From IMG/VR virus record IMGVR_UViG_3300050132_000038, positions 154,862 to 218,861 of that record: 64,000 nt of DNA. One strand, given 5' to 3'. Below, in pieces: positions 10,035-63,596 of this stretch. Position 1 is the first letter of the stretch, and every line of letters begins with the position of its first letter. The notes beneath the pieces are model-generated. The model was not told the origin of the DNA and searched no databases. It saw only the letters and a list, made by a program, of their open reading frames with translations. A program made the position numbers and the translations under genes.

Positions 10035-10289
10035 ATGTCCCTAAAACTAAAGGCGGCGTCAAGACTGTTAGCTGCGGAGTACACGGGTGGCATTTCAGTA
10101 GGTGACTTCGTTGAGGTCGTTCCGCAGGTTCATGGTAGGACTTACGGTCGGGTGCGTGAGATCAAAGGTGACAGATTGGTGATCCTCCTAGCTGATAGCA
10201 AGTCTAATCTCCGCTTCGGTCATGGGGTAGTAGAGGAGATCCCCCGTGCACAATGTACCCGAGTCAATGTCACTGACCTCCCAAGTTAA
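10035..10289 (+). CDS. Small protein with N-terminal KLKAASRL tag and an SH3/KOW-like body
   Basis: AAGGAG RBS; ISVGDFVEV...YGRVREIKGD pattern. Confidence 0.65.
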   Translation: MSLKLKAASRLLAAEYTGGISVGDFVEVVPQVHGRTYGRVREIKGDRLVILLADSKSNLRFGHGVVEEIPRAQCTRVNVTDLPS

Positions 10290-10372
10290 CCCTCAATTTT
10301 ATTATGTAAGTCCCATACGGCGTACTCTGAGTTTTCTTCGGGAAGGGTGCTTGAAGTACGATTCGTAATTTG

Positions 10373-10416
10373 GGGCAGCTGCTAATAGGTGGGACCTTAG
10401 GCTGCCCTAATTTTTT
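10373..10416 (+). terminator. Rho-independent terminator
   Basis: GGGCAGC...GCTGCCC stem followed by TAATTTTTT. Confidence 0.65.
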
Positions 10417-10539
10417 AGTTACCAAATTTCATATACGGTATTCCGTACATAGTACTTCATATAGCCCTGGAGCCCTGGCTGGCTTCCAAGAGGTTCGCAA
10501 GTCGGCCGTTCTCCAGTGCTCTGCTTTTAGGAGCACACA

Positions 10540-11505
10540 GTGTCCCTCTCAGATGCAATAAGCAGTGCTACAGCTTCATTCAATCCTAGTGCGTTTGCTT
10601 CAACGTTTGCTCCTGCGGCCGCTACTGGTGCTTTGTCCTTCTTAGGATCTAAGTTAGCGAGTGTAGCAGGCCCAGGTGCTCTTGGTACACTAGGTGCAGG
10701 TATGGCTCCTGGCAACGATTTGGCTGGCATACAAGCACGTAGTGATCCACTCCTATCCTTCTGTTGGTATGCACAGCTACCCACAATAACTCCTAACCCA
10801 ACTAGTAGCAATACAGTCAATCAGAACACTGGATCTATACTAGGTGGTATTCAGGCAGCAGCCTCATCTATAGCAGGTGCCGCAGTGTCTAGCTTGGCCT
10901 CTACTCTAGGTGGTTCCGTGTTTGCCTCAGGGTCAGCTGTTAGTCTTCCTTGGTACTACGTTGAAGAAGCACAGCTACCCTTCAGAAACTTTAGCTCGAA
11001 GCCCATCTTTAGGGAAGGTCGTGATAGACACTACGTAGATAAGTACAGTGTAGATAACCTAACACTCCACTTCTATCTGGACTCGTCGAACACAGTACTA
11101 CAGTATTTGCAAGCATGGCAGAACGCAATGATCTCCCCCTTTGCGGCTAACTCAGCAGCTACATCGGGTGGCGGATTCGGTAGACCCTCGCAGTACAAGC
11201 AGCCGATTTACATTTACATTTTAGACGTTACGAAAAGCCAGATGGCTATTGTTGAGTACACCGAATGTTGGCCTACTAATCTTAGTGCCTTACAGTTAGA
11301 CTCCGGTGCCTCTAACAGATTGATAGCGCAAGTCCCTTTCTCAGTTGGTGACGTGTTTGTAAACATAGTAGGTGTAGCCCAATCGCTAGTTAATGGGGTT
11401 CTAGCCAACCCCTCACAATTCAAAAACCTGTTAAGTGCAGCAGGATCAAAGGTAATGGGGAATGCAGCTTCCTCAGTTAGCAGTTCCATCGGGTCCATGA
11501 TCTAA
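10540..11505 (+). CDS. Tail tube-like / tube-associated protein
   Basis: GTG start after AGGAG; core NLTLHFYLD...YLQAWQN...YKQPIYIYILD...CWPTNL resembles T4 gp19/gp54-type folds. Confidence 0.6.
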   Translation: MSLSDAISSATASFNPSAFASTFAPAAATGALSFLGSKLASVAGPGALGTLGAGMAPGNDLAGIQARSDPLLSFCWYAQLPTITPNPTSSNTVNQNTGSILGGIQAAASSIAGAAVSSLASTLGGSVFASGSAVSLPWYYVEEAQLPFRNFSSKPIFREGRDRHYVDKYSVDNLTLHFYLDSSNTVLQYLQAWQNAMISPFAANSAATSGGGFGRPSQYKQPIYIYILDVTKSQMAIVEYTECWPTNLSALQLDSGASNRLIAQVPFSVGDVFVNIVGVAQSLVNGVLANPSQFKNLLSAAGSKVMGNAASSVSSSIGSMI

Positions 11506-11528
11506 CCCTTCCGCCGTAGGAGTACTAA

Positions 11529-12632
11529 ATGAATAACGAAACAACAACTACAACGCAGAACTTTGCGTTTCCTCCTGAGCGACAAGCTCAGATTGAAGCC
11601 TTAACTAAAGCACGGCAAGCCCAGTCTCAACCGTTTCAACGGCAAGACCCGCGTCAGCAGGCAGCCCAACAGTCTAATCAACAGCCACAGCCACAGCAAC
11701 CGTACCAGCATCCTTATTTAGGTCAGCAGGTTGCACAACAGCCAGTAGTACATCAGTCCCCTGTAGCACGTCCTGGTATTACTATGCCTGTGTCGAAAGA
11801 ATTCCCTTCGGTGCCTAACGTAATGCCCGGGTTCACTGCACCTGTTGCTGATCCAGAAGGTGTTTCGTTAACCTTACCGTCGAAGTTTGCTTACTACGCA
11901 TTTAAGGATGTGTACGTTAAACCGTTTAAGGGTAAGCACCTTTCCAAGCTGAGTCGCGCACACGCAGAGGGCTCACTGCAGCAACTAGTCGAAGCCGTGT
12001 CCTCGGTGTTGAGCACCACGACTCCTGGTGTAGGTCCATTAGGTTTTGAATTAACGCTTCCTGACTTCACCTATGTGTTGTACTGGTTGCGTCAGAACTC
12101 ATACACTAAATCGTCCTTCATTCATAAGACTCAGTGTAATAACCCTGCACACATCGCACAGGTTCGAGAAGGTAAGCTAGCTCCTGAAACACTCCAGATT
12201 GCTGAGATCATTCGTAAGGGTGATCTTACTGTTGTGGAATTGGATCAACTGCCAGACCCTGATTACTTCAAGTTCCCTGCTGACGTCCCCTTCTACTTCA
12301 CTCCGCCTACAATGCGTACTGCTATTGAGTTCGCAGAAAGCCCGAGGATGCAGGCGGAAGATCATGAGGAGTTTGAGTACTTAGCCCAGCTTGGTTCCTT
12401 CATTCAGCGTACATCCTTCCTAACCGATCCACAAACTTACTGGACAGTAGATCAACGGGCGCAGGCTATGGAGGAAGCAGAAGGCGGAGAGATTCAACTG
12501 ATTAAAGAATTTGAAGAGGCTCTGAAAGGCTACGGCGTGGAAGAGAAGATTAACGTAACTTGCAAGGTGTGTGGCGCATCCAGGATGACGAAAGTCGTTC
12601 TCGATGCGCATTCATTTCTTTCCGCTAACTGA
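11529..12632 (+). CDS. Tail/baseplate hub assembly chaperone (gp26-like)
   Basis: LPSK...VYVKPF...LTLPDFTYVLYWLRQNSY pattern and C-terminal CKVC; Gln-rich N-terminus; upstream of the tape-measure-like gene. Confidence 0.55.
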   Translation: MNNETTTTTQNFAFPPERQAQIEALTKARQAQSQPFQRQDPRQQAAQQSNQQPQPQQPYQHPYLGQQVAQQPVVHQSPVARPGITMPVSKEFPSVPNVMPGFTAPVADPEGVSLTLPSKFAYYAFKDVYVKPFKGKHLSKLSRAHAEGSLQQLVEAVSSVLSTTTPGVGPLGFELTLPDFTYVLYWLRQNSYTKSSFIHKTQCNNPAHIAQVREGKLAPETLQIAEIIRKGDLTVVELDQLPDPDYFKFPADVPFYFTPPTMRTAIEFAESPRMQAEDHEEFEYLAQLGSFIQRTSFLTDPQTYWTVDQRAQAMEEAEGGEIQLIKEFEEALKGYGVEEKINVTCKVCGASRMTKVVLDAHSFLSAN

Positions 12633-12798: not shown

Positions 12799-12817
12799 CT
12801 AAGTAAGGATACGTGTC

Positions 12818-14911: not shown

Positions 14912-16372
14912 ATGAACTCTCTAACAGACGCAGCAGCACTAGTACCTACGCCTAGAGAGCGCACTAGCGATTCTACTAAGGACCTAGAAGACCAGATTGA
15001 TAACGCAGATCTCTCTACACTATTAGCAGCCTTGGAAACTCCAGCAGTGGAAGAACACTTGACTGAAGGTGTTCAGGGGTTGGTGAACAAGTATCAGAAG
15101 AAGCAAAGCCCACCCCTTGCTGCCATTACTCTAGGGGTTGTTGAAACCTTCAGGGAGATGCAGGACTTAGAGGAGAAGTTCTCAAACGTAGAGGGTGAGG
15201 GCATTCACCTACTGAAGCGTGTAGCTAAGTGGGGAATACATAAGATCGTTAAGTACGTGTTCAAACTAGCATTAAAGCTAACGCTCAAGTTTGTACGCTG
15301 GATAGTTAAAAAGGTAATCGTGCAGGGTCTAAAGGCTCTAGTGGAATGGGTTGTACGCCCCATTCTTACGGAAGCCTTAGGATTCATCGGAGTCAACCCT
15401 GAACTGTGGCCGTTCATCGCAATAGCAGGGGGTGTTGCTGGTATCGGTCTCGCTAGTTGGAAGATGTTTTTCGATAAGCCAGCCTCTGACAAGACGGACT
15501 CTATAGATCCCACTACTGATGAGTTCCTGTCAGGTGCTCTACGTGATGTGCAGAAGGGGGAGACCGCCGGAGAGCCTACAGGAGAAACTACTGTAGCAGC
15601 TCAGGGTCAGGGTATGGTTGCTGCACCTCCTATTGCAGCAGGGTCTGTGGCAGTACCCCCAACGGGTGACGATAAAGCTATCATGGCAATGATTATGCGC
15701 CATGAGGGAGTAAAGCTGACGCCCTACAAAGACTCATTAGGATTATGGACAGTCGGTGTAGGTCACTTAATTGGAGATGGGCATAGCTTACCCCCTGAGT
15801 GGAACCGCACGTTCACTATGGATGAGATCCAGGCCTTGTTTGCCCAGGACTACCTCAAGCATAAGAAAGCTGCTATGAACATTCCAAACTTTGCACGCCT
15901 AAGTTCCGGCGGGCAGGCAGCCCTTATTGATATGACGTACAATATGGGTCCGACTTGGTGGCATGGCTGGCCGACCTTTACTAAGTTCATGCAAGATCTG
16001 GACATAGCAGACGCAGCTGCAAGTCTGGAAAGCAGTAAGTGGTACACACAGGTTGGCGCACGTGCTCAGGAAGTGGTGGCACTGTTGAAGTCCAGTACGA
16101 TTAACAGCGGAAGTACAGTAGCAGCCTCGGCTAATAAGCTTAGTGGTGCGCCTCCGGCCACCGCACCTACTACACAGATTGCTAGTAGTACACGCTCAGC
16201 TCCTAGTTATCCAGTGAAGCAGACCACCGCAGTTACCGTGGCATCGACTAATGTGCCTAGCGCACAGAGTACCCAGCAGTCCTCCGGTGCTTCAGGTGGT
16301 ATTGTTAATCCACCACCAGCAGATAAGAATTACATCCAGGGTGCTAAAGGCACTCTGATAGCAGTAAGTTAA
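14912..16372 (+). CDS. Tail-associated protein with a GH24 (T4-type) lysozyme domain
   Basis: IMRHEGVKLTPYKDSLGLWTVGVGHL...ALIDMTYNMG...SKWYTQVGARA. Confidence 0.85.
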   Translation: MNSLTDAAALVPTPRERTSDSTKDLEDQIDNADLSTLLAALETPAVEEHLTEGVQGLVNKYQKKQSPPLAAITLGVVETFREMQDLEEKFSNVEGEGIHLLKRVAKWGIHKIVKYVFKLALKLTLKFVRWIVKKVIVQGLKALVEWVVRPILTEALGFIGVNPELWPFIAIAGGVAGIGLASWKMFFDKPASDKTDSIDPTTDEFLSGALRDVQKGETAGEPTGETTVAAQGQGMVAAPPIAAGSVAVPPTGDDKAIMAMIMRHEGVKLTPYKDSLGLWTVGVGHLIGDGHSLPPEWNRTFTMDEIQALFAQDYLKHKKAAMNIPNFARLSSGGQAALIDMTYNMGPTWWHGWPTFTKFMQDLDIADAAASLESSKWYTQVGARAQEVVALLKSSTINSGSTVAASANKLSGAPPATAPTTQIASSTRSAPSYPVKQTTAVTVASTNVPSAQSTQQSSGASGGIVNPPPADKNYIQGAKGTLIAVS

Positions 16373-16382
16373 GGAGTACCTA

Positions 16383-16427
16383 ATGTCGAATATAAATCCG
16401 AACTACATGGTGACTATCGCCCCTTAG
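16383..16427 (+). pseudogene. Orphaned duplicate 5' end of gene 17615
   Basis: AAGGAG RBS followed by MSNINPNYMVTIAP*, versus MSNINPAYQVTIMQ at 17615, using different codons. Confidence 0.8.
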
Positions 16428-16445
16428 ACAACTTGCTACCCTGTC

Positions 16446-16550
16446 AATTTAATAGTGAGCATAGAGCGAAAGGGCCGGCCAGCCTCCGTCAGATCCATAT
16501 CATCTGACTAGCTTTATGTTTCACTTCTTAAATCGATATGGGGTTGTCAA
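16446..16550 (+). ncRNA. Conserved structured leader / candidate guide RNA of GIY-YIG gene 2
   Basis: Outer stem 16454-16467/16511-16525, AGG-N9-CCT loop ending at 16485, inner stem GTCAGAT/ATCTGAC. Confidence 0.75.
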
Positions 16551-17612
16551 ATGTCCACGAACTACCAGGAGCTCGCTGAGCTCTACTTCCACGAGTACGA
16601 CCAAAATTCCCTTGAAGACCCGTATGAAAAGAAGCGGCGCAAAGTCTTTAAAGAATTAGCAGCCGCTATAATAACCTCGGAATTCCCAGAGCTAGAAGCT
16701 CAGATCGCAATAGCTGCCTGGAACTTAACCGCAGAGTTAGCCGTTACTGGTAACAAAGGTAAAGGACGTAGACTTAAGTTAGATAAAATCTTCTACGTGT
16801 ACGTTCTTATGGATCCCCGTAAGCCAGGCCAGTGGATTATAGATCTCCCAGGTGGGAAAATTATTGAGCTTCCTTTCCTACCTTTCTACGTAGGAAAAGG
16901 GTACGGTGGTAGAATGAAGGCACACGCCCGACACGCCAGAGCTAAGCCCACTCCTGTAGCAGGTGAGCATAAAGCTAACACTATTCGTAGTCTTCATCGC
17001 CTTGGCCTAGAACCTATAGAGAAACGAGTCAGTGGATTCTCTATAGAGGCCGTAGCACTAATGAAGGAAGTGGGGTTAGTGAAAGCTGTTGGTCGTGGTA
17101 GGAATGGACCACTTACTAATCTTAGTGACGCCGGGGAGGGCCTAAGCGGCTACAAGCCCACTGAGGAAACTAAAGCTAAAATAGCTGCTAAGCTAGATCA
17201 GATCGTAGCCAAAAGAAAAGCTACCTATGCGGGCAAGAGTCAAGAAGAGTTAGACGCTATCAACGAGAAGAATAGCCTAGCGCATCGTGGTAAGAAACAG
17301 AGTGTTGAAACACTTGAGAAGCGAGTAGCACAATTACGTGGTACCACCCGCCCGACGGAAGTAGGTACTAAAATTAGTGCTTCTAAGATGGGGCATGAGA
17401 CCTCAGTAGAAACACGGGCAAAGCAGAGCGCTGCAAAGAAAGGTCGACCGGCGCTCAATAAGGGTACTACTCATACTGAGGAAACTAAAGCTAAGATGCG
17501 CGCAGCTAAAGCTGCTCAGCCTATAAAAATTTGTGAGCACTGTGGCACAGAAAGTAAAGGTACTGCCTTTACTAGATGGCATGGTGACAACTGTAAGTTT
17601 AAGAAGGATTAG
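16551..17612 (+). CDS. Free-standing GIY-YIG-like homing endonuclease 2
   Basis: FYVYVLMDPRKPG...PFYVGKGYGGR...PLTN; NUMOD3-like repeats (SEETKAK type); C-terminal CEHC...H..C zinc finger. Confidence 0.82.
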   Translation: MSTNYQELAELYFHEYDQNSLEDPYEKKRRKVFKELAAAIITSEFPELEAQIAIAAWNLTAELAVTGNKGKGRRLKLDKIFYVYVLMDPRKPGQWIIDLPGGKIIELPFLPFYVGKGYGGRMKAHARHARAKPTPVAGEHKANTIRSLHRLGLEPIEKRVSGFSIEAVALMKEVGLVKAVGRGRNGPLTNLSDAGEGLSGYKPTEETKAKIAAKLDQIVAKRKATYAGKSQEELDAINEKNSLAHRGKKQSVETLEKRVAQLRGTTRPTEVGTKISASKMGHETSVETRAKQSAAKKGRPALNKGTTHTEETKAKMRAAKAAQPIKICEHCGTESKGTAFTRWHGDNCKFKKD

Positions 17613-23086: not shown

Positions 23087-24352
23087 ATGACGACACCACT
23101 TCCACCATCATTATACGAGTACACACTCTCACCTCCCACTACTGATAGCAAGGAGAATATTAGGCTAGGCTACAGGACCCCAAGATCCCTGTTGGCTCCT
23201 CCGTACATCTACCAAAATCCTTATTTTGTAGCCCTGCTGGATGCGGTAGACTATGTGTTCGAGACCACCGTCGATATTCCAACAGAAGTTTTAGGTGACC
23301 TACGTAAGATGTGGGTCACTAATCCGATGTTGGAAAACAATCAGATTGCTAACTCAGAGTTGATCCCCTTCGAGGCATGGTCGCAACCTGAGTGGGAGAT
23401 TTTGGTTAAGCAGGTCAATATGTTGGGCATGAAGTTGCAGTCAGCTTCGGTATTGACCAACGATAACTATCAGTCTATAGCTAGGTGGGTTGGTCAATAC
23501 TGGTTTGGTAAGGGGACCTCAGCATTCATTAATTTTATAAATTATTGCCTGAGTTCTAGCCTAGCTATAGAACAGCTGTGGACCGCAGACTACATTACGT
23601 TTTACCCTACAGGAGATTCCCGCATAGGAACTCCAATATGGGAGGGAGGCACTTGGTATCCTACTCCTAATGTAGCAATCACGGCTTCGGGTGGTCTACA
23701 ATCACTAGATGTGCAGACGTTGACCACATTCTTCTACGAGATTGCGAATTACAATATAGTGTTGCATGACATAGCACTAACGTTTGATATTCCAATCACT
23801 ACCACACCTACGGGTACCAATGCCCCTGTAGTAGCGTTAGGATTGAATATGGTTCAAGCGGTGCCGATCTCTAACTTGTACAGCTACGGTGCGAACTCTC
23901 CAGAGCTTACCATAACAGACGAAGTCCCCACCGCAGCGTGGACGACCAATCCAGGTAATATTGACCTTACTGGTGTGTATATGCTGGCAGCCCCTACGTC
24001 ATGGATTCAAGATACTATGGGGCGCGTCTTTCCGCTGTATGACGGCCCACAGCAAGTACCTGTACTAGAGACAGAACTCCCTACTACCCTATGTGGGCCC
24101 GTAGTAGCTGGAGCAACCTCTGTTATATATGGCCCTGTTATGTGGCAGGCTATTCCGACCGGCACGTATAGCGGCGGACGCCTTCCGGTGTTCAGCACAA
24201 TGCCTGTAGCAAAGACCGCAGACCTAGGAGAGGCCCCTACTAATCTAGTAGGGTTCCCCACATGCCTATTAGTTAATCCTACAGGCTTTGCTGAGTTTGT
24301 GCTAGGCTCCGGTTTATACAGTCCGTATTGGACAGGTTCCCCAGTACTCTAA
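23087..24352 (+). CDS. Baseplate wedge protein (gp7/gpI-like)
   Basis: Position; GQYWFGKGTSAFINFI pattern. Confidence 0.5.
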   Translation: MTTPLPPSLYEYTLSPPTTDSKENIRLGYRTPRSLLAPPYIYQNPYFVALLDAVDYVFETTVDIPTEVLGDLRKMWVTNPMLENNQIANSELIPFEAWSQPEWEILVKQVNMLGMKLQSASVLTNDNYQSIARWVGQYWFGKGTSAFINFINYCLSSSLAIEQLWTADYITFYPTGDSRIGTPIWEGGTWYPTPNVAITASGGLQSLDVQTLTTFFYEIANYNIVLHDIALTFDIPITTTPTGTNAPVVALGLNMVQAVPISNLYSYGANSPELTITDEVPTAAWTTNPGNIDLTGVYMLAAPTSWIQDTMGRVFPLYDGPQQVPVLETELPTTLCGPVVAGATSVIYGPVMWQAIPTGTYSGGRLPVFSTMPVAKTADLGEAPTNLVGFPTCLLVNPTGFAEFVLGSGLYSPYWTGSPVL

Positions 24353-25496: not shown

Positions 25497-27281
25497 ATGA
25501 GTGGCACGCCCGTCTTCCAGATCACCTCAATTGGTTTAGCTACTGCTTCAATAGCTCTACCTACAGGCCCCTATATAAATATCACAAGCTTTGCCATCGG
25601 GAGTGGGTATGGTTATACCCCCTTACCTACTGATACCGGGCTGAGTGGTACTACGCTATTCTCCGGAACTCCCACCTCCTACCAGAACGTAGGTGGGGAT
25701 ACAATCGACATTCTGTGCTCGATACCTCCTAATGCCGGGCCTTTCCAGTTCGGGGAGATTGCACTGTATCTTCCTGGTAACGTAATGTTCGCCAAGGCGG
25801 TGTTCCCCACACCGCAGACCAAATTCAGTGCCCTAGGCTCTAACGTTGTTTCCTCGTATGAGCTCCACTGCTTGCTGACGTTGGCTCAGGGAACAGCGAT
25901 CTTCCAGGTCACTACGTCTAGTCCTACTACCCTGTTACAGGTGTTCAACTGGTCGGATATTTACCCACCAAGCTTGAGTGCTAATCCCACGGTACCCTTA
26001 CTACAGGTTATGGAGCTCTCGGAGTACGGTGATTCAACACTACTCTCTAACTCTAGTGCTGGGACGTGGACGATTGACAGCACGTATGGTCGATATTCTC
26101 AGTACAACGATACGCCGTACTTTCAAGTAGCTAATGCCTCGACCACTTGGATTGAAGTACTAGCAACTGAGTTACACCCACAGGATATAACAAGTGTTAG
26201 TGAACGGTTTGTTATTGAAACTTCCAGTGGGTACTTCCGTTCTGTAAATAGTGTAGTAGCGTCGGGTATGAACTACCGGTTTAACTTGAACGGAGCCCCA
26301 TTGCAAACTGTACCTATGGCCGGTTCCAACATAACGGTTTATCGTGATGACCTGGCAAAGGGTACTTCGTACTACTCACAGATTCTTGATCCACTGAACT
26401 ACGACATCACTAACTATGCCGCAGACACGGGTACAACTAATGCGTACGCAGCTACGTATAAGCAGAAGACTCCGGTACCACAAGTCGGGATGATTCGTTC
26501 TTTCCTAGTAGCCAATCCTAATACAGGTGCCTCTACTTTTGCACTAGACGGAGGGGCACCCTACCCGGTTTACGGTATGAACAATACGCCGTTACAGGGT
26601 GAAGAAATGAATGGTCGAGTTTGGGTAGAGTTCTCGGCTACTAGTAACTGGATTCTAATTAACAGTAGTATGGGTCCCCTACAGATTCCCAATGCACTGT
26701 ATAGTCAGCAAGCAGTTACCCTAGGGCAAGCGCAGGCGTTATCTCCTCCAGGGCAGATCATATATATGGCTGCGTCTACGCCCCCTACCGGGTTTCTCGT
26801 TGCCAACGGGTCTGCCGTGTCGCGTACTGCTTACGCTAATTTATTTGCTACTATCGGTACCTACTACGGTACTGGTGACGGAGCAACGACGTTTAACCTT
26901 CCTGACTTACGCGGTGTCGTCCCCCGAGGATGGGATGACGGTCGAGGACTAGACACTGGACGGGTCTTTGGTACGTACCAAGCTGACATGTACATGTCTC
27001 ACAATCACGGAGTTAATGACCCGACGCACAATCACTATGTTAATGACCCAGAACATACGCATACTATGACGATGGGCAGTCTTGCTCAGTCGGGTAGCTC
27101 TACCTACTGCTATGTACCCAGTAGTCTGTATGGGTTTCCTAATCCCCACACAGAAACTACTAGCCCTGCTGCTACGGGTATCTACCTTAGTGCTGCTTAC
27201 ACTGGTATTAGTATTCAATATTCGGGCGGTAATGAGACCCGAGGAAAGAATTTTTCACTGCTAGCCTGTGTGAAGTTCTAA
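25497..27281 (+). CDS. Tail fibre with collar domain
   Basis: PPGQII...PTGFLVANGSAVSRTAYANLFATIG...FNLPDLRG...GWDDGRG; HNH/HTH tip repeats. Confidence 0.85.
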   Translation: MSGTPVFQITSIGLATASIALPTGPYINITSFAIGSGYGYTPLPTDTGLSGTTLFSGTPTSYQNVGGDTIDILCSIPPNAGPFQFGEIALYLPGNVMFAKAVFPTPQTKFSALGSNVVSSYELHCLLTLAQGTAIFQVTTSSPTTLLQVFNWSDIYPPSLSANPTVPLLQVMELSEYGDSTLLSNSSAGTWTIDSTYGRYSQYNDTPYFQVANASTTWIEVLATELHPQDITSVSERFVIETSSGYFRSVNSVVASGMNYRFNLNGAPLQTVPMAGSNITVYRDDLAKGTSYYSQILDPLNYDITNYAADTGTTNAYAATYKQKTPVPQVGMIRSFLVANPNTGASTFALDGGAPYPVYGMNNTPLQGEEMNGRVWVEFSATSNWILINSSMGPLQIPNALYSQQAVTLGQAQALSPPGQIIYMAASTPPTGFLVANGSAVSRTAYANLFATIGTYYGTGDGATTFNLPDLRGVVPRGWDDGRGLDTGRVFGTYQADMYMSHNHGVNDPTHNHYVNDPEHTHTMTMGSLAQSGSSTYCYVPSSLYGFPNPHTETTSPAATGIYLSAAYTGISIQYSGGNETRGKNFSLLACVKF

Positions 27282-27303
27282 ACGAATATAAGGATAATAA
27301 ACA

Positions 27304-27798
27304 ATGACTACCAAAACCGTTTATAACTATGACTCTAAGTCCTTTCGCTATCTCGGGGAGGGTACTGCCTTTGAATCCCCGCTGGAGGAGGGGGTCTACC
27401 ACTATCCAGCTAACTCAACCACTGTTGCAGTACCCGAGTATACTCCACAAGTTGCTCATGCTGTATGGAATGGTGAACGTTGGAACGTAGTAGCTCTCAG
27501 CACCCCAGAGCCAGGTTCAGCTGAGAGTGAGATGACTTCTTGGCAGCAGTACCAGATGAACGTGGTCAAGGTACTATCTCATAGTGACGCAGTAATGACA
27601 GGTATCTTGGATGCAGTGATTCTAGGACTGAACACCTTTGATAGCCCAGATGTAGTGGCGTTCGTGCAGTGGCGCATGAAGTTGAAAGCAATACTTAATA
27701 TCCTCGAAGGAGATGCTAATATAGAGGTTCCGAAAATGCCACCACTACCAAAGGGGCTTACTCCCGAGGCCTTCAACGTATTACCAAAGAAGGGGTAG
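27304..27798 (+). CDS. Tail fibre assembly chaperone (Tfa-like)
   Basis: VYNYD...PANST...AVWNGERW, directly after the collar fibre. Confidence 0.7.
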   Translation: MTTKTVYNYDSKSFRYLGEGTAFESPLEEGVYHYPANSTTVAVPEYTPQVAHAVWNGERWNVVALSTPEPGSAESEMTSWQQYQMNVVKVLSHSDAVMTGILDAVILGLNTFDSPDVVAFVQWRMKLKAILNILEGDANIEVPKMPPLPKGLTPEAFNVLPKKG

Positions 27799-27800
27799 TC

Positions 27801-28313
27801 ATGAACAAACCTGTGTACGCACGCATTCTCTATGATGAAGTTAAGAATGCTAACCCAGAAGGTGGTCTCTATGTGTGGTGCACGCCTGACTCTAGATCAA
27901 CGCTGAAACTGCAGAAGCTTATGGCAGGTGCTCCTTTTAAAACTCGGAATACTACACAGCTGCATTGTACGATTATGTACCACCATGATGTACTTCCTGA
28001 ATCAGTTGATGTACCTGAAGACCGGGAGATGACAGGATTACTAAGGGAGTTGGTGATCTGGGATGAACCTAACGGAGAGTCGATACTGGTGGGTGTTTTG
28101 CACTCCGAAGACCTACAGGAGCTCCACCAGGAATTAGAAGGGCAGGGATTAAAGCATTCTTTCGAGGACTATACTGCTCATATTTCACTAGGTAAGGATT
28201 TACAGAAAGATGAGCAGACCTTAGCCTGGATTCAAGAGAAGAATGAACTGCTAGATGGGCTGCCAATCGTTATTGATTTTGATGCTTGCTTGAAGGGTAG
28301 TTCGATCGTGTAG
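27801..28313 (+). CDS. 2H phosphoesterase, T4 gp57B/Acb1-like
   Basis: GLYV...LHCTIMY...LVGVLHS...HSFEDYTAHISL, with two HxT/S motifs. Confidence 0.75.
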   Translation: MNKPVYARILYDEVKNANPEGGLYVWCTPDSRSTLKLQKLMAGAPFKTRNTTQLHCTIMYHHDVLPESVDVPEDREMTGLLRELVIWDEPNGESILVGVLHSEDLQELHQELEGQGLKHSFEDYTAHISLGKDLQKDEQTLAWIQEKNELLDGLPIVIDFDACLKGSSIV

Positions 28314-29071: not shown

Positions 29072-29359
29072 TTATTCTTCTTCATCTTCTTGTTCTACAC
29101 TGGAGATATGGGTGTCGTGATCTCCGGCTTGATTCGAGGGCATTATAGAAGCCTCCTTCTTCAACGTAACTACCAATCGGTGTGCTGCATTTAACTTGAA
29201 ATTGGTAGCATTCAATAGGATCTCTGATTTAGGATGCACTTCGGGCTCCAAGTCTACACCAGTTGGCAAGTAAGGTTCATCTAGGTTGTGATTAGGTGCT
29301 ACCGTATTGAACGAATAATCTTCTGCTGTTATCTTTAGTGTACTTCGTATCTTTTTCAT
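29072..29359 (-). CDS. Hypothetical protein with internal KLNAAHRL motif
   Basis: Fills the operon; motif shared with four other small ORFs. Confidence 0.55.
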   Translation of the reverse strand: MKKIRSTLKITAEDYSFNTVAPNHNLDEPYLPTGVDLEPEVHPKSEILLNATNFKLNAAHRLVVTLKKEASIMPSNQAGDHDTHISSVEQEDEEE

Positions 29360-29360: not shown

Positions 29361-30443
29361 CTAGAGCTCCGCAGAACAGCCTATAAAGAGATAGCCTTCA
29401 TTGGGTGCACTATTTCTAGACGTTACTGGGTAATACGGAGAGAGTCCAGTAAACCCGGTTACCTGAGTCCATAAACCATAGGTAGTAGCTGCCCCGTTAG
29501 CCAAGACGGGAGGATTTGCTTCCCAATTGGCAGCACCTGATCGTATCCAGGCAGGCAAACCCGGTATCAAAGATACAGTCGGTATAGCTCTCATAGGAAC
29601 TATAAATTTCTCTGCTACACCGACTACCGTGGCAGCTTCTACAGAACCAAAAAGTCCATTACCTGCTAGTTGGTAGTACCTCTGGCATAACCCTAACTCC
29701 GTTGTATACAGTCTGTTCTCAAAAAGGGTTGCTACGGTCCCTGCTTCTAGCTGGAGATCAGTAACCGCTATGTAGTTACCTATCGTCATTCCCCAGTTAG
29801 TAGAACTCGTAGCTGAGAACCAATTTCCTGCCTGCCACGTGTTCAAAGTTGACGTCGTATAGTTCCCGGCATTCAATGCTCCTATAAGCACGCTTAATCC
29901 CATCATATTAGAATTAGGGACGTTAAGCGTTAGAGGTAGCACACTGATAGGTATTACTACTTTTACGGGTACACTGGCAACTGCCATAAAGGTTGAAACG
30001 TAAGAGTTAGTAGCGTTACTATCCTGTATAGTAACGCTATACATACCACTAACATCGGTCTCAAATATAAAGGATATTGCTACAGGCTGACCGAGTAGGT
30101 CATAACAGTTAAGCCCTTCTATCCGCTGATATACACCATACGTGTAGTAAGCAGTACCTAGGGTAAACGGTGTAGTTACTGTTTGGACTACTGCATTCCT
30201 CAGCACTCCATTGTAGGTAATGGCACCCTGGCTCTGTGTGAACGCACCAGTGGCTAGGCCATCAACTGCGAGGTATCTATCAGGACCTGCGTACCCTTGC
30301 GTCATCGTTTGATTAAAGGTCATGCTAGGACGTTGAGCTACGTTACATGCCCCATTTATAATACGATTACGGAACGCTACCTGAGTGGTAGCCAAGTTTG
30401 ATAGTGCTTGCGCGTCCTGCGCTATATTAGCTGAAATTCCCAT
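29361..30443 (-). CDS. Fibre-associated carbohydrate-binding-like protein, paralogue A
   Basis: FRNRIINGACNVAQR...GPDR...LQLEAGTVAT.FE.R...ELGLCQRYY. Confidence 0.7.
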   Translation of the reverse strand: MGISANIAQDAQALSNLATTQVAFRNRIINGACNVAQRPSMTFNQTMTQGYAGPDRYLAVDGLATGAFTQSQGAITYNGVLRNAVVQTVTTPFTLGTAYYTYGVYQRIEGLNCYDLLGQPVAISFIFETDVSGMYSVTIQDSNATNSYVSTFMAVASVPVKVVIPISVLPLTLNVPNSNMMGLSVLIGALNAGNYTTSTLNTWQAGNWFSATSSTNWGMTIGNYIAVTDLQLEAGTVATLFENRLYTTELGLCQRYYQLAGNGLFGSVEAATVVGVAEKFIVPMRAIPTVSLIPGLPAWIRSGAANWEANPPVLANGAATTYGLWTQVTGFTGLSPYYPVTSRNSAPNEGYLFIGCSAEL

Positions 30444-34142: not shown

Positions 34143-34802
34143 TCACCAAGTAAAAATTTTATTAGCCAAGTTCAGGACTGGAAGTCTAGAGCTCACGGTA
34201 TCGGTTGACCCATTGATAATCTCAGTTACCCGAGTAAACGAATCAGAATCCGCCAGAGCATTCAGCTTATTAGTCATCCAGAACCACCCAGCGGTTAGCA
34301 TTCCGTCTGTGTACTGACTTACCTTATCTGGGTTATTCAGGTAAACTGTAGCATCGTTATATAGGTAGGCCGAGGCTGCCTTGTAGTTATCGAGAAACGT
34401 TAGATCGAATCCTCCGCGACCACGATAAGCATAGCCGTCACCCGATGTAGCATTGCCATTACCATCTCGACTAGCATACACGAGATTAGCTAGCTTCTCA
34501 GGGGCTTCCACGAAGTCTGGTGCATACTCTTTACCGGGTGCATCCTCAGCTAAAGAAAACCGTGACGGCCACACTTCTACTAATCGCTCTGGGGTAGAGT
34601 AAACTAGATCCTCTTCCCAAACAGTGAATCCCCCTGTCTCGAACGACGACTGCGCCATGAAGTATCGAACTCGAATTGCTGAATCGCTAATTTGAAAACG
34701 ATCTAGCGTCTGGTTAATCGCAACCACTAGCTGTGCTCGATCAGCAAGATTGAGGTGGGTAGCAAACGCTGCTAGTTGAGAATTACTGATGTTGAATTTC
34801 AT
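34143..34802 (-). CDS. Endolysin, GH19 chitinase-like
   Basis: FMAQSSFETGGF...LANLVYASRDGNG...GDGYAYRGRG...LTFLDNY...INGS. Confidence 0.9.
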   Translation of the reverse strand: MKFNISNSQLAAFATHLNLADRAQLVVAINQTLDRFQISDSAIRVRYFMAQSSFETGGFTVWEEDLVYSTPERLVEVWPSRFSLAEDAPGKEYAPDFVEAPEKLANLVYASRDGNGNATSGDGYAYRGRGGFDLTFLDNYKAASAYLYNDATVYLNNPDKVSQYTDGMLTAGWFWMTNKLNALADSDSFTRVTEIINGSTDTVSSRLPVLNLANKIFTW

Positions 34803-37173: not shown

Positions 37174-38259
37174 TTAAAGTTCTGCGTCAAAGTTAATCCA
37201 GCCTAGTGTAGAAGATCCAACATATATCTCCCCTCCTTGACCACCCGTCCATGTGGCTCCGCTAGCGTTTAATACTACAGTTACCCCTTGAAGGGACATC
37301 CACACTGTGGACGTGCTTGTAGCTGGCGCCAGCTCGGTATAGGTAGCTCCCCAGATATTAAAGTATGTTAGTGTAGGTATTGTCCGCATTAACACTGGAA
37401 ACATTACGGGAACGTACATTTGGGTAGTAGTAACCACAAAACCGGAGGCTACACTAGCAGAGAGTGTTGGAGTCAACACGTTACTAATACGATAGCAATA
37501 GCGTTGGCATAGTGCAAACTCTATACCGGAATGTCGGGTCTCAAACGTAGTGGCGGAGGTCCCTGCTTCTAGCTGGAGATTGGTCAGTGCTATATAGTTA
37601 CCGGTAACTGCTCCCCAGTTAGTAGCACCCATAGCCGTGATATACGCTCCAGTTTGCCACATACCAAGAGTCGAAGTCTGGTACGTACCCGTGTTAAGGA
37701 ATCCAATAGTGCACTGTAAACCTGTAGCGGGACTATTTGGTGTCCCTAACGTTAGTGGTAACATTGATATTGGTATTAGCACTTTCACTGGAGTACTTGC
37801 AACCGCTAGGAATGTAGTAACAAAAGAATTTGTACCAGTGCCATCTATCAGCGCGACACTATACGTACCACTAACGTTGGTCTCAAATATAAAAGATACA
37901 GTTACTGGTTGTCCCAATAAGTCATAGCAGTTGAGCCCTTCTACTCGTTGCTCGATGCCTGACCAATAGTTAGTAGTAGTTGTGCTAACTATAGGGGCGT
38001 TGACTGTTTGGACTACTGCGTTGTGCACGATCCCGTTGTACATTATTGTACCCTGGGACTGTGTGAACTCCCCACCTGCGGTCTCGCCGTTAACTGCAAT
38101 AAATCGATCAGGTCCACCATACCCTGAAGTGGCTGTAGTGGCTGCAAACGCTGGTCGTTGGGCTATATTACAACTCCCATTGATAATCCGATTGCGGAAG
38201 GCCCATTGCTGAGTTACAAGTTCCGGTGTTAAATTTGCAATGTTATTTGTCGCTGACAT
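37174..38259 (-). CDS. Fibre-associated carbohydrate-binding-like protein, paralogue B
   Basis: FRNRIINGSCNIAQR; collinear with 29361..30443. Confidence 0.7.
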   Translation of the reverse strand: MSATNNIANLTPELVTQQWAFRNRIINGSCNIAQRPAFAATTATSGYGGPDRFIAVNGETAGGEFTQSQGTIMYNGIVHNAVVQTVNAPIVSTTTTNYWSGIEQRVEGLNCYDLLGQPVTVSFIFETNVSGTYSVALIDGTGTNSFVTTFLAVASTPVKVLIPISMLPLTLGTPNSPATGLQCTIGFLNTGTYQTSTLGMWQTGAYITAMGATNWGAVTGNYIALTNLQLEAGTSATTFETRHSGIEFALCQRYCYRISNVLTPTLSASVASGFVVTTTQMYVPVMFPVLMRTIPTLTYFNIWGATYTELAPATSTSTVWMSLQGVTVVLNASGATWTGGQGGEIYVGSSTLGWINFDAEL

Positions 38260-59808: not shown

Positions 59809-59923
59809 TGTGTAAACGTTACCCGATAAACCCGTTCATTGCAGGTAGGCTACGACGCTGTAGCCCCTATCCTACGGGGTCAAAATCGGGTTTGTAGGCA
59901 AATACCCATGAGGGAGGCTAAAA

Positions 59924-60739: not shown

Positions 60740-61164
60740 GAATCCTAGAGCTACCTGAGTACGATTCACCGAGGATCGATTACTTACACGGCGGGCATCT
60801 ATCGTTGTTCATTAGTCGTGGGGATATGACTAGGGTTGAGCACGTACTGCAGCATGGCACCACATCAACTCAGCCTTTCGATAAAGTCATAGATGTACAG
60901 GTGGTGCTAAAGAATAAGGGAGCAGACGTTATTGTAGTTCGCAGTGTCTGCTCGTTGTGGCTAGCTGAACCTGATAGGCATTTTGAGAACATCGGGTATA
61001 GTGTTACCCGAGTTACCACAAAGCATTGGGCTACTAATGATGAACTCCCTAGTGTGTTTGCGGAGATTAAAGAGCTTAGGGAATTCTATGCTCCAGCTAC
61101 AAGGGTAGTGAATGAGCGGCAGGATATAGTATCAGGCCTCGGGGACATTAATCTTAGATGCTAA
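60736..61164 (+). CDS. Hypothetical protein
   Basis: GGAGG RBS, ATGA overlap. Confidence 0.55.
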   Translation: MRILELPEYDSPRIDYLHGGHLSLFISRGDMTRVEHVLQHGTTSTQPFDKVIDVQVVLKNKGADVIVVRSVCSLWLAEPDRHFENIGYSVTRVTTKHWATNDELPSVFAEIKELREFYAPATRVVNERQDIVSGLGDINLRC

Positions 61165-61173
61165 GGAACACAA

Positions 61174-61374
61174 ATGAAAGTTGAAATTGACGGCGTTAGT
61201 CACGAGATGATAGGCCGCGGCAAGCTCATAGAGCTATTGAGAAAGCTTGACGATGACGCCTTAATTGCAATTAAGGATAACCATATGGTTGTTGTCCACG
61301 GCGCCGAACAGGAAAGCATCGCAACGATCTTTCTGGATCAAGAGAAGACTGTATACTACGACGAGGGATTCTAA
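61174..61374 (+). CDS. Hypothetical protein
   Basis: AAGGA RBS. Confidence 0.55.
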   Translation: MKVEIDGVSHEMIGRGKLIELLRKLDDDALIAIKDNHMVVVHGAEQESIATIFLDQEKTVYYDEGF

Positions 61375-61605
61375 ATGAGAGTTGATATTGAACGAGTCAG
61401 GGAGCTGAAAGCAGAGCTTAGGAAGATCAATGACTGCAAGCTAGAGGATCTTCAAGTCTTTGAGAATGGTAAGGAGATTGTACCCAGCCCTAAGATGCTA
61501 AATCGGTGGCGGTACATGGGGTTAAACAACACCGACTACATCCTCATGGAGTACTATAAGGAAAACGACGAGCCTGTAGAGAAGGCATGGATTATAGTCG
61601 AGTAA
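61375..61605 (+). CDS. Hypothetical protein
   Basis: Abuts the upstream stop. Confidence 0.55.
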   Translation: MRVDIERVRELKAELRKINDCKLEDLQVFENGKEIVPSPKMLNRWRYMGLNNTDYILMEYYKENDEPVEKAWIIVE

Positions 61606-61615
61606 CAAAGTAGAA

Positions 61616-61643
61616 GAGGGACACCAATTGCTCAGTGTCCCTC
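61616..61643. terminator. Hairpin between convergent operons
   Basis: GAGGGACAC-N10-GTGTCCCTC. Confidence 0.7.
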
Positions 61644-61646
61644 GAT

Positions 61647-61883
61647 TTACTCTTTTCCGCCTTCTGGTTTACCGCCTTCCTTCTTACGCTTCACTTGCTC
61701 TTTGGTACGTTCTAGTTGTTCCTGCGTATCCAAGATAGACTTCTTGTCCCCAAAGCTTTGATCTTCAGTTGGCTTCTCCTTCTGAATTTCCAAACGCCTC
61801 TTCAAAGATTCCTCTGCGGGATCTTTCTGTGCTTCACCCTCGGCGGCTAACAACCGTGCTGCTGCATTCAACTTGATTTTCAT
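61647..61883 (-). CDS. Charged small protein with KIKLNAAARL tag
   Basis: ATG 61883 after AGGA; Lys/Glu-rich. Confidence 0.6.
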   Translation of the reverse strand: MKIKLNAAARLLAAEGEAQKDPAEESLKRRLEIQKEKPTEDQSFGDKKSILDTQEQLERTKEQVKRKKEGGKPEGGKE

Positions 61884-61888
61884 TTCAG

Positions 61889-62287
61889 TCATCCTAAGGT
61901 TTGAATAAACTGTTGTACGTCGTCCGTAGAAGTCGGCATGTACAGATACGAGTGATCGTCATCTACACAACATACAAGAGGACAGCGCTGCCCTGAACCA
62001 TACCCTAGAACAATACCACTAGGGCAGGTCTTGAGACATTCAATAGACGACACATCCACCTCTGCTACTTCAACGTAGCCTTCTGCCTGCAACCTCTTGT
62101 ATAGTGCTTCGTAGCTATCCTGATCGAACTGCACGCAGCACTCTTCCATGTTATCGAAGAAGCCTTTGTCTTCTAGCTTCTGCCACTTCACAGAATCCAA
62201 ACATTTAATGAGATCGGTGAACTCATCTAGTGCTTGGCTATCAACAGCTGCCCTAAGTCGTGATGCTGCGTGTAGTTTGACCTTCAT
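61889..62287 (-). CDS. Acidic protein with KVKLHAASRL tag
   Basis: AAGGA RBS, with an AATTTCATA motif upstream. Confidence 0.6.
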   Translation of the reverse strand: MKVKLHAASRLRAAVDSQALDEFTDLIKCLDSVKWQKLEDKGFFDNMEECCVQFDQDSYEALYKRLQAEGYVEVAEVDVSSIECLKTCPSGIVLGYGSGQRCPLVCCVDDDHSYLYMPTSTDDVQQFIQTLG

Positions 62288-62314
62288 TAGAAATCCTTAA
62301 AATATGTTATGAAA

Positions 62315-63049
62315 TTAGGATACGCTCTCAATGGCGTACATCCCATGAGCCAAGCTAGGACTCAGTACGTAGGCAAACGGCATCCAGCAGTAACCATTGA
62401 TCCCCCAATCAGGTCCCCAGCTGTTACGGATTAGAAACATCTGCTTCGCCAAGTCGTAGCCTACTATACACACGCAATGGCCACCTAGCATTTCCTCCGT
62501 AGAGTTCGGCATAGGCACAATACCAGAGGCCGCTACCTCTTGCGATTCAAACGCGGGGTACACAAGGAACCCTAATACTACTGGATAGCCATTAGACAGG
62601 GGGGTCATCACAGAGGTTTGATCCTGGGCTACACGCGAATACTTTAACGCCTTACGTTTAGTTGCATCGGCGTAGGCAGCATCTGAGGGCTTGGTGTAGA
62701 GGTCATCCTTTGAATACGGCCACAAGGATAGCTCACAGGCCCCGTAGGTCAGAAGGACGTTTATTCCATCCTCTACGAAGGCCCCGTCATCTGAAGCTAC
62801 AGAGCCGTTTAGGACTCGTTCATTGTAGTACACAAACTGCTGAGACAGAGAGATCGTAGAGTTGTGCTGTACGTTTTCTAGGTACTCCATTGCACTGATA
62901 ACGGCAAAGGCAACACAGCTACTCATATCACCCTGATTGGCTATGGGGCTACACTTCGGCCTCAAGTCTACTACAGACGGTAGGGAGGACTGGGTAATAC
63001 CCAGAGCGTATCTAGCGGGAACTGGTAGGTAGTTCATTAGGAACCTCAT
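62315..63049 (-). CDS. Papain-like C1 cysteine peptidase
   Basis: VDLRP...NQGDMSSCVAFA (catalytic Cys), GGHCVCIVGYD (His), IRNSWGPDWG (Asn). Confidence 0.9.
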   Translation of the reverse strand: MRFLMNYLPVPARYALGITQSSLPSVVDLRPKCSPIANQGDMSSCVAFAVISAMEYLENVQHNSTISLSQQFVYYNERVLNGSVASDDGAFVEDGINVLLTYGACELSLWPYSKDDLYTKPSDAAYADATKRKALKYSRVAQDQTSVMTPLSNGYPVVLGFLVYPAFESQEVAASGIVPMPNSTEEMLGGHCVCIVGYDLAKQMFLIRNSWGPDWGINGYCWMPFAYVLSPSLAHGMYAIESVS

Positions 63050-63104
63050 TGAGTTCTAACGGGGTCAATGAGGCTAGGACTACAAGGTAGTCAAGGATAA
63101 CAGA

Positions 63105-63596
63105 TCAGTCGTACAGGCTAGACGGACGGACCTTCGACCGCTTCAGAGGCTTCTTCGGTGCAGGTTCAAACGTCGTAACCCTATAGTCTCCGTCGGACGT
63201 TTTCTTGATCGTTACAGAATGATCTCCCTTGCTGTAGTGCGTTCCGTCGGACCCCCAGTCCTCTTGCTCAAAGCCTTGTTTAATTAAATCTTTAGACATT
63301 GAGTCCACGGCTTTCTGATCGGTGTACCCCTCGCCAGAACGTTCACCATCCCGGACTACGTATTCCCCTAAGTCGATCTTGTGCTTCTTACCTAAATCGC
63401 CACTGAAGCTGGCGGCTGGCGTAGGCTTTATTGGTGCAGGTTTTGTAGGCACTGTCTTTACCGGAGCAGCCTTACCTCCACCCTTACCATACTTACTACC
63501 AGGATGCTCTTTGAGGTACTTCTGTTGACGTTCTTTAGGCCAGTCTTCAAAGCCTGACTCTACCAAACGGGCTGCGGCATTGAGTTGAATTTTCAT
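63105..63596 (-). CDS. Protein with KIQLNAAARL tag
   Basis: AAGGA RBS; WPKERQQKYLKEHPGSKY segment. Confidence 0.6.
   Translation of the reverse strand: MKIQLNAAARLVESGFEDWPKERQQKYLKEHPGSKYGKGGGKAAPVKTVPTKPAPIKPTPAASFSGDLGKKHKIDLGEYVVRDGERSGEGYTDQKAVDSMSKDLIKQGFEQEDWGSDGTHYSKGDHSVTIKKTSDGDYRVTTFEPAPKKPLKRSKVRPSSLYD

What the first reader, a model, noticed from the sequence alone, without database searches (positions are those of the whole stretch)
10035..63596. Shared KxxLxAAxRL peptide tag on five otherwise unrelated small proteins
MSLKLKAASRLLAAE (10035), MKIKLNAAARLLAAE (61883-), MKVKLHAASRLRAA (62287-), MKIQLNAAARLVES (63596-) and internal FKLNAAHRLVV (29072..29359-). The bodies share no similarity and the genes are scattered. 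Established analogue: T4 internal proteins share an N-terminal capsid-targeting sequence that is removed by the prohead protease. Inference: this is a head-packaging or processing signal marking proteins ejected into the host.
Basis: partly seen in the sequence, partly recalled or inferred. Interest (0 to 1): 0.65.

Follow-up and report, generated by a model that had tools for sequence, protein, structure and literature searches.

The report
Shared N-terminal tag on phage proteins
A giant bacterial virus puts the same 12-residue tag on the front of about 22 otherwise unrelated proteins whose genes sit among its head-building genes, so the tag is most likely an address label that loads them into the virus head, though no experiment has tested this.

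Summary
The window is the last 64 kb of a 218,861-bp uncultivated jumbo phage related to Ralstonia phiRSL1, Burkholderia BcepSauron and Achromobacter Motura. The core L-N-A-A-x-R-L (fuller form M-K-[LI]-[NQ]-A-A-x-R-L-x-A-[ST]) occurs 24 times in the genome against 1.4 expected, and 5 times in the window against 0.3. About 22 ORFs carry it, 20 of them within 2-6 residues of a start codon. Codons vary freely, so the peptide is what is conserved. The bodies are unrelated: NUDIX hydrolase, homospermidine synthase, a weak kinase-like match and many orphans. Orthologues of two bodies in sister phages lack the tag, while NUDIX keeps it in three genera. Variant tags occur in Motura, BcepSauron, phiRSL1 and many IMG/VR relatives. 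Nearly all tagged genes lie in the tightly packed head/tail gene block, often beside the prohead protease. Best reading (about 0.5): a capsid-targeting or cargo-loading propeptide that works like the T4 CTS but is not homologous to it. Not shown: packaging, cleavage or ejection. A glutamate cleavage site after the tag is not enriched. Verdict: a new variant of a known kind.

The parts
10035..10289 (+). Tagged 84-aa ORF. The tag MSLKLKAASRLLA is at 10035-10073. The gene lies in the + strand structural operon, between portal (5512-7386) and a tail-tube-like gene (10540-11505).
   Evidence: start ATG preceded by AAGGAG; 24.0 bits. No Pfam or PHROG family. Only two 82%-identical metagenomic homologues.
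61647..61883 (-). Tagged 78-aa ORF, MKIKLNAAARLLAAE..., with a charged low-complexity body. It is the last gene of the long minus-strand block.
   Evidence: 32.3 bits. AGGA lies 8 nt upstream of the ATG at 61883. An alternative ATG at 61892 would add only MTE.
61889..62287 (-). Tagged 132-aa ORF, MKVKLHAASRLRAA..., with an acidic, Cys-rich body.
   Evidence: 24.4 bits. No family.
63105..63596 (-). Tagged 163-aa ORF, MKIQLNAAARLVES.... A second motif (DWxKERQxKYLKEHPGSKY) follows the tag, then a Lys/Pro-rich tail.
   Evidence: 26.9 bits. Five metagenomic homologues keep the first ~45 residues and diverge after them.
29072..29359 (-). 95-aa ORF at the end of the tail-fibre operon with an internal tag copy (FKLNAAHRLVV, 29168-29200). 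It is probably a fused or decayed tagged gene. A strong RBS plus ATG at 29143 starts a 23-codon frame just after the tag.
   Evidence: 26.9 bits at residue 55. No canonical start with an RBS lies next to the tag.
7397..7669 (+). Possible degenerate instance: a 90-aa protein just downstream of portal (MYSFLTVARRVDVEA...). Its phiRSL1 orthologue begins MYSFISAAVQRLQATD, which is the phiRSL1-style tag.
   Evidence: The own copy scores below threshold, so membership is uncertain.
5512..7386 (+). Portal protein. Listed as context only, as the head gene nearest the + strand tagged ORF.
   Evidence: phrog_16240, 8e-194.

Best explanation
The tag is a short N-terminal helical address peptide, that is, a capsid-targeting or cargo-loading propeptide. 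It docks its bearer onto a component of the assembling prohead (scaffold core, protease or inner shell surface). In this way about 22 different proteins, small charged proteins and enzymes alike, would be enclosed in the head with the late structural proteins, and probably delivered with the DNA at the next infection. The tag may then be removed by the head maturation protease. Shown: the tag exists, is selected at the peptide level, is modular, is conserved across at least four phage lineages, and sits in the head-assembly gene block. Inferred: binding to the prohead, cleavage and ejection.
For: (1) The tag is far above chance and positioned at N-termini. (2) Selection acts on the peptide. 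L, A, A, R and L are invariant in 20 of 20 copies while using 4-6 codons each, and third-position identity is 0.34. (3) The tag is modular. The NUDIX domain starts at residue 25 and the homospermidine synthase domain at residue 23. The phiRSL1 and Motura HSS orthologues, and the Motura orthologue of the 465-aa protein, lack the tag, and the Motura protein starts exactly where the own body begins. (4) It is conserved on orthologues: NUDIX and a second family are tagged in this phage, phiRSL1 and BcepSauron. Variant tags occur on about 11 Motura, about 6 BcepSauron and about 10 phiRSL1 genes, and on dozens of genes in IMG/VR relatives. Motura's independent annotation uses the same starts. (5) Context. 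In this genome the tagged genes interleave with tail tube, sheath, major head protein, head maturation protease (phrog_18299, 6e-90) and connector, with operon-like gaps. One tagged gene ends 3 nt before the protease gene. Synteny holds in phiRSL1, Motura and IMG/VR contigs, and the gene(s) directly downstream of the protease are tagged in L089, L090, L094, L096 and phiRSL1 ORF133. (6) The tag matches the T4 CTS in length, position and role; in T4 a 10-20-residue CTS brings unrelated internal proteins and Alt into the core and gp21 removes it (PMC5694885). (7) A at +2 (64%) and S/T at +3 (52%) after R-L are conserved, and the MCP N-terminus in the clade carries a similar V-A-A-[ST]. This is a possible common processing site and is only suggestive.
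Against: No proteomic or structural evidence shows that any tagged protein is in a virion. Glutamate after the tag is at chance level (21 of 75), so the T4/phiKZ-type cleavage rule is not met. A metabolic enzyme such as homospermidine synthase is an odd capsid cargo. One tagged gene (genome 87701-88063) lies outside the structural block, among small orphan genes. The block also holds non-structural genes (topoisomerase IB, a molybdoenzyme operon), so location alone does not prove late expression. More distant relatives with a homologous head module (Erwinia Alexandravirus, Xanthomonas PhiXhv-15) show no tag near their head genes. The docking partner is unidentified.
Confidence: 0.5

Rival explanations
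1. The tag is a docking helix for a hub that is not the capsid, such as an assembly chaperone, a multi-enzyme complex or the host DnaK system. It would gather or fold many phage proteins without packaging them.
For: The tagged set includes metabolic enzymes (HSS, NUDIX). The heptad-like L..A...L spacing and invariant Arg suit helix-groove binding to any partner. The tag resembles helix II of J-domains: the phage's own DnaJ-like protein scores 17 bits on the tag matrix.
Against: The genes are consistently embedded in the head module next to protease and connector across genera. No tagged protein matches the DnaJ model even at E<=10. No candidate hub was found to co-occur with the tag.
Confidence: 0.2
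2. The tag is an N-terminal degron or protease-recognition signal that times the turnover of many phage proteins through a host AAA+ protease or a phage protease.
For: It is N-terminal, basic plus hydrophobic, and shared by unrelated proteins. The block encodes extra proteases: a papain-family enzyme at 62315-63049, and a Motura homologue of the neighbouring 542-aa gene is annotated as SprT-like.
Against: No ClpP family member is present in the genome. Rapid turnover of proteins encoded in morphogenesis operons has no obvious purpose. The invariance of five positions across genera is stricter than known degrons. The papain-like gene has no tblastn hit in phiRSL1, BcepSauron or Motura, which all carry tags.
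Confidence: 0.08
3. The shared 5' end is a nucleic-acid feature (a translation-initiation or operator element, or a recombination handle for swapping gene cassettes), and the peptide is only a by-product.
For: It lies right at the start codon of many genes sitting in insertion-prone slots between conserved structural genes.
Against: Every invariant residue uses 4-6 different codons. Third-position identity is 0.34 against 1.0 at second positions. The phiRSL1 variant has an extra residue but keeps the amino-acid pattern.
Confidence: 0.03
4. The tagged proteins are diverged paralogues of one ancestral gene, and the N-terminus is simply the part that has not yet drifted.
For: Five proteins share a second motif after the tag and two are full-length paralogues. 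Homologues of the 163-aa protein keep about 45 N-terminal residues.
Against: The bodies include unrelated folds with their own cellular families (NUDIX, saccharopine-dehydrogenase-type HSS), and their orthologues elsewhere lack the tag. All other body pairs show no similarity at E<0.01.
Confidence: 0.04

Closest known systems
Phage T4 capsid targeting sequence (CTS) of internal proteins IPI-III, Alt and gp24
   Same: Both are 10-20-residue N-terminal peptides shared by otherwise unrelated proteins. In both, the genes accompany head genes and the phage encodes a prohead protease. T4's cargo includes small charged proteins and an enzyme (Alt). In T4 the peptide targets proteins to the scaffold core (PMC5694885).
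   Different: There is no sequence similarity to the T4 CTS (MKTYQEFIAE as I recall it from the literature; not verified here). T4's L/I-x-E cleavage rule is not a general feature here. The family is far larger (about 22 proteins, roughly 7% of genes) and includes metabolic enzymes. Packaging and cleavage are untested.
Head-protein propeptides of phiKZ, 201phi2-1 and SPN3US giant phages
   Same: These jumbo phages load many head and ejection proteins. Their N-terminal propeptides are thought to target the prohead, and some paralogues keep identical N-termini, for example SPN3US gp53 and gp54.
   Different: Those propeptides are mostly longer than 100 residues, are cut at S/A/G-x-E, and are not one short consensus spread over unrelated bodies. 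They also belong to a different phage lineage.
Encapsulin cargo-loading peptides
   Same: A short conserved terminal peptide on unrelated enzymes docks them to the inner face of an HK97-fold shell, and cargo genes lie next to the shell gene.
   Different: As far as I know, encapsulin peptides are usually C-terminal, have a different consensus and are not cleaved. Here the compartment would be a DNA-filled virus head. One C-terminal tag-like copy does exist here (genome ORF 23834-24304, 19.9 bits).
MuF-type polymorphic toxins and effectors of temperate phages
   Different: The MuF module is a whole domain of several hundred residues, not a 12-residue peptide. No MuF homology was seen here.

Membership tests
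T4-type capsid targeting sequence | Short (10-20 aa) N-terminal peptide shared by proteins with unrelated bodies | tested here: met
   The tag spans about 12-14 residues, with invariant L, A, A, R, L. The bodies are unrelated apart from one paralogous pair.
T4-type capsid targeting sequence | Phage encodes a prohead maturation protease, and the cargo genes accompany head genes | tested here: met
   Head maturation protease at genome 15905-16723 (phrog_18299, 5.9e-90). Tagged genes flank it in this genome and in relatives.
T4-type capsid targeting sequence | Peptide ends at the protease's cleavage motif (T4 L/I-x-E; phiKZ group A/S/G-x-E) | tested here: not met
   A first Glu falls within +2 to +6 of R-L in 21 of 75 tags, about the 28% expected by chance. 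About 12 of the 23 own-genome copies do end in L-x-E or A-x-E (my count from the sequences). A-[ST] at +2/+3 is conserved instead. The protease's specificity is unknown.
T4-type capsid targeting sequence | Sequence homology to the T4 CTS | not tested
   No alignment was run. By eye there is no resemblance to the T4 CTS as I recall it, and Pfam and PHROG give nothing for the tagged window proteins. If the function is shared, it is by analogy.
T4-type capsid targeting sequence | Bearers are present in proheads and virions, and the mature form lacks the peptide | not testable with these tools
   The genome is an uncultivated IMG/VR record. The phiRSL1 virion-proteome paper is not held.
T4-type capsid targeting sequence | Peptide is sufficient to package a foreign protein | not testable with these tools
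   This needs a tag-reporter fusion in a cultured relative.
Encapsulin-type cargo-loading peptide | Peptide binds the inner surface of the HK97-fold shell protein | not tested
The shell protein was not tried.
J-domain (DnaJ) proteins | Match to the DnaJ profile with helix II and the HPD loop | tested here: not met
   PF00226 finds only two untagged ORFs in the genome, even at E<=10. The resemblance of the tag to helix II is superficial.

The most novel reading that the evidence does not exclude
One portable 12-residue peptide serves as a general cargo-loading signal for a whole clade of jumbo phages. It would load more than 20 different proteins per phage into the capsid for co-injection, including a NUDIX hydrolase, a kinase-like protein and even homospermidine synthase. 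Cargo would be gained and lost simply by adding or removing the tag. The peptide may be processed at an A|S/T site like the one in the major head protein's own N-terminus, rather than at glutamate.
Probability: 0.35. Interest if true: 0.8.

Novelty: new variant of a known kind. Interest (0 to 1): 0.66.

Why it matters
If the tag is a packaging signal, the injected protein set of a whole jumbo-phage lineage can be listed from sequence alone. That set would include enzymes that could act on the host before any phage gene is expressed. The tag would also be a compact, natural handle for loading foreign proteins into large capsids, as the T4 CTS has been used. It shows cargo recruitment evolving by simple tag gain (HSS and the 465-aa protein) on otherwise conserved genes. 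Even if the packaging reading is wrong, a strictly conserved peptide on about 7% of a phage's genes marks an unknown shared partner worth finding.

Tried and rejected
- Complex prediction of the head protease (alignment A2) with the adjacent tagged 98-aa protein returned 'no answer' (score 0.01). This is neither for nor against binding.
- The AlphaFold model of the protease from a 7-row alignment was unusable (mean pLDDT 34), so no fold search was run and the protease class is unresolved.
- Pfam S77, S78 and ClpP models find nothing in the genome, and the protease has no Pfam or PDB sequence match.
- Pfam and PHROG give nothing for the five window proteins. ESM Atlas gave no usable hit.
- The own-genome tag HMM missed phiRSL1, because phiRSL1 uses a variant with one extra residue. 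That variant was found only by reading the N-termini.
- Glutamate cleavage site after the tag: not enriched, so this is dropped as a general claim.
- Tag derived from the MCP N-terminal propeptide: the MCP ranks only 25th of 347 on the tag matrix (3.4 bits). This is kept as a weak lead only.
- An internal tag-like hit in the scaffold-like 523-aa protein lies in a non-conserved stretch and is treated as chance.
- The nucleotide-level explanation is rejected on codon data.
- Literature searches for the motif and for clade proteomics found nothing relevant. The phiRSL1 genome and proteome paper is not held.
- The IMG/VR pattern scan's 34 hits are close to my rough estimate of about 20 chance matches, so only loci with several tagged ORFs plus synteny were counted.
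- The large profile search and the read-mapping tools were not used. No alternative genetic code was needed.
Full report
WHAT THE WINDOW IS. The window is bases 154,862-218,861 of a single 218,861-bp contig with 48% GC. It is an IMG/VR virus record rated 100% complete. Its 127-bp terminal repeat is an assembly overlap, so the map is circular. Tail-fibre and major-head-protein searches place it with Ralstonia phage phiRSL1, Burkholderia phages BcepSauron, BcepSaruman and BCSR5, and Achromobacter phage Motura. Major head protein identity to these is 60-75%. Positions 1-28 kb of the window, on the + strand, hold terminase, portal, a tail-tube-like gene, baseplate and lysozyme genes. Positions 28-42 kb, on the - strand, hold tail-fibre genes.

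THE OBSERVATION. Four start ORFs that have good Shine-Dalgarno sites. The fifth is internal to the 95-aa ORF 29072-29359. The motif is far above chance: 5 copies against 0.3 expected in the window, and 24 against 1.4 in the genome.

The family is much larger than reported. About 22 ORFs in the genome score 24-36 bits on a tag matrix, and the next best protein scores 9. Twenty of these have the tag within 2-6 residues of the start. One sits behind a non-canonical GTC codon, and one is the internal window copy. L, A, A, R and L are invariant. Over 75 distinct tags from this phage and its relatives, the consensus is M-K-[LI]-[NQ]-A-A-x-R-L-x-A-[ST].

THE PEPTIDE IS SELECTED, NOT THE DNA. Each invariant residue is written with 4-6 different codons. 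Pairwise identity is 1.0 at second codon positions and 0.34 at third positions.

THE TAG IS MODULAR. With the tag removed, only one pair of bodies is paralogous, and five proteins share a second short motif, WW..L...QK.YI.EHP.SKY. Recognisable bodies are:
- a NUDIX hydrolase (Pfam 6.6e-9, PHROG 1.3e-20; the domain starts at residue 25);
- a saccharopine-dehydrogenase-type homospermidine synthase (domain starts at residue 23);
- a weak T7 gp0.7-like kinase match (PHROG 3.4e-6);
- a weak GNAT match.

The homospermidine synthase orthologues of phiRSL1 and Motura have no tag. The 465-aa protein carries a 37-residue tagged extension, and its Motura orthologue starts exactly where that extension ends.

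CONSERVATION IN RELATIVES.
- The NUDIX orthologues of phiRSL1 (MKINSAFRLL) and BcepSauron (MEAAYRLL) are tagged, and so is a second family.
- Motura has about 11 genes starting M-[EQI]-I-Q-A-A-x-R-L-x-A. They are packed around its connector gene, and the GenBank annotation uses the same starts.
- phiRSL1 uses a one-residue-longer variant, I-x-A-A-V-x-R-L-x-A-T-E-V, on ORF111, 112, 123, 124, 127, 133 and others.
- An IMG/VR pattern scan returned 34 loci, near my rough estimate of about 20 chance matches. About half of them are syntenic relatives carrying 2-10 tagged ORFs each.
- More distant phages with a homologous head module (Erwinia Alexandravirus, Xanthomonas PhiXhv-15) show no tag near their head genes.

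CONTEXT. The three tagged genes at 61.6-63.6 kb in the window are the tail end of a long minus-strand block. That block continues across the contig junction into genome positions 1-40 kb. Within it, tagged genes alternate with the following genes:
- tail tube (5575-6081);
- sheath (7038-8975);
- major head protein (10682-11770);
- an acidic scaffold-like 523-aa protein;
- head maturation protease (15905-16723, phrog_18299, 5.9e-90);
- a 1525-aa conserved protein;
- the connector (26511-28037).

Intergenic gaps are mostly -4 to about 80 nt, and sigma-70-like promoters are not in excess. One tagged gene ends 3 nt before the protease gene. In L089, L090, L094, L096 and phiRSL1, the gene or genes directly after the protease are tagged. 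The window's + strand copy (10035) lies between portal and a tube-like gene. A small portal-adjacent protein (7397-7669) has a phiRSL1-style tag in its phiRSL1 orthologue.

MECHANISM. The best fit is a capsid-targeting or cargo-loading propeptide working like the T4 CTS. In T4, a 10-20-residue N-terminal peptide brings unrelated internal proteins and Alt into the scaffold core, and gp21 then removes it (PMC5694885). The steps that are shown here are existence, peptide-level selection, modularity, conservation and head-module context. The steps that are inferred are docking to the prohead, cleavage and ejection.

The glutamate cleavage rule of T4 and the phiKZ group is not met as a general feature: 21 of 75 tags have a nearby Glu, which equals chance. 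What is conserved after R-L is A at +2 (64%) and S/T at +3 (52%). The major head protein N-terminus in the clade has a similar V-A-A-[ST]. I note this as a possible common processing site, no more. The head protein's overall resemblance to the tag is weak (rank 25 of 347).

RIVALS. Four alternatives remain:
- A non-capsid docking hub or chaperone recruitment. The tag resembles J-domain helix II, but no tagged protein matches the DnaJ model.
- A degron. No ClpP is present, and the block does contain an extra papain-family protease.
- A nucleic-acid element. This is rejected on the codon data.
- Plain paralogy. This is excluded by the NUDIX and homospermidine synthase bodies.

LIMITS. No virion proteome for any tag-bearing phage could be read, and nothing on the motif was found in the library. 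The one complex prediction gave no answer, and the protease model was too poor to use. The tag matrix was trained partly on the sequences it scores. Gene calls outside the window come from a crude caller of my own.

VERDICT. I file it as a new variant of a known kind: it works like a CTS but is not a member by homology. Interest 0.66.

Noticed in passing
window 63602-64000 (-), continuing across the contig junction to genome 1-3375 (L001:1-3375): The phage carries a three-subunit molybdenum hydroxylase operon of the xanthine dehydrogenase / CO dehydrogenase type. It comprises a 2Fe-2S subunit (L001:2893-3375), an FAD-binding subunit (L001:1918-2892) and a MoCo-binding large subunit whose C-terminus is the window ORF 63602-63916. 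The operon follows a strong terminator hairpin at genome 3388-3419. This is an unusual auxiliary metabolic gene set for a phage.
   Followed up: partly
window 62315-63049 (-): An untagged papain-family cysteine protease (Pfam Peptidase_C1, 1.1e-20) sits between two tagged genes. It is conserved at about 51% identity in several IMG/VR relatives, but no tblastn hit was seen in phiRSL1, BcepSauron or Motura.
   Followed up: partly
window 63105-63596 (-); also L001:3438-3788, L001:4950-5558, L002:16845-17780, L002:17777-18808: A second conserved motif, W(W)..L...QK.Y[IL].[ED]HP.SKY, follows the tag in five proteins. It recurs three times inside a 576-aa BcepSauron protein. It loosely recalls J-domain helix I/II plus HPD but gives no DnaJ match. 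Its function is unknown.
   Followed up: partly
L096:2579-4564: In one IMG/VR relative the head maturation protease is 661 aa. It has a large insert ending ...VHN|CEHDNE, right at the conserved LEHDNE motif. This looks like an intein in the protease active-site region.
   Followed up: no
L002:8656-9219 (-) (genome 28656-29219): A full-scoring tag (VKLNAAHRLLAAAE, 30.5 bits) with a good RBS starts at a GTC codon. The nearest canonical in-frame start is 46 codons upstream. This could be non-canonical initiation, a mutated start or a fusion.
   Followed up: no
L002:3834-4304 (-) (genome 23834-24304): A conserved 156-aa head-block protein ends in a tag-like sequence at its C-terminus (LKLGASARLLATAK*, 19.9 bits). 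The NUDIX protein also ends ...KMSAAYRLTHFD. This hints that the signal may work at either terminus.
   Followed up: no
L001:12562-14133 (-): The 523-aa protein between protease and major head protein is labelled 'ATPase' by PHROG. It looks instead like a scaffold: a conserved N-terminus, a (G)STHFxNE motif seen two or three times (three in this phage), a long Asp/Glu-rich low-complexity stretch and a conserved helical C-terminal half. The repeats could be protease or binding sites.
   Followed up: partly
window 8615-9721 (+) and 16551-17612 (+): A LEM-3-like GIY-YIG nuclease gene and a homing-endonuclease-like gene are inserted in the structural operon. The first lies just upstream of the tagged gene at 10035.
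   Followed up: no
window 29143-29072 (-): Inside the ORF with the internal tag, a very strong RBS (AAGGAGG) sits 8 nt before an ATG and opens a 23-codon acidic frame (MPSNQ...EEDEEE). The locus looks like a rearranged remnant.
   Followed up: no
window 29361-30443 (-) and 37174-38259 (-): Two similar ~360-aa tail-fibre genes (both phrog_4492) flank a 1094-aa tail protein and a chitinase/endolysin-like gene (34143-34802) within the fibre operon.
   Followed up: no
genome 120854-121033 (+), outside the window: The phage encodes a bona fide J-domain (DnaJ) protein (80.9 bits). Its helix II is the best non-tag match to the tag matrix.
   Followed up: partly
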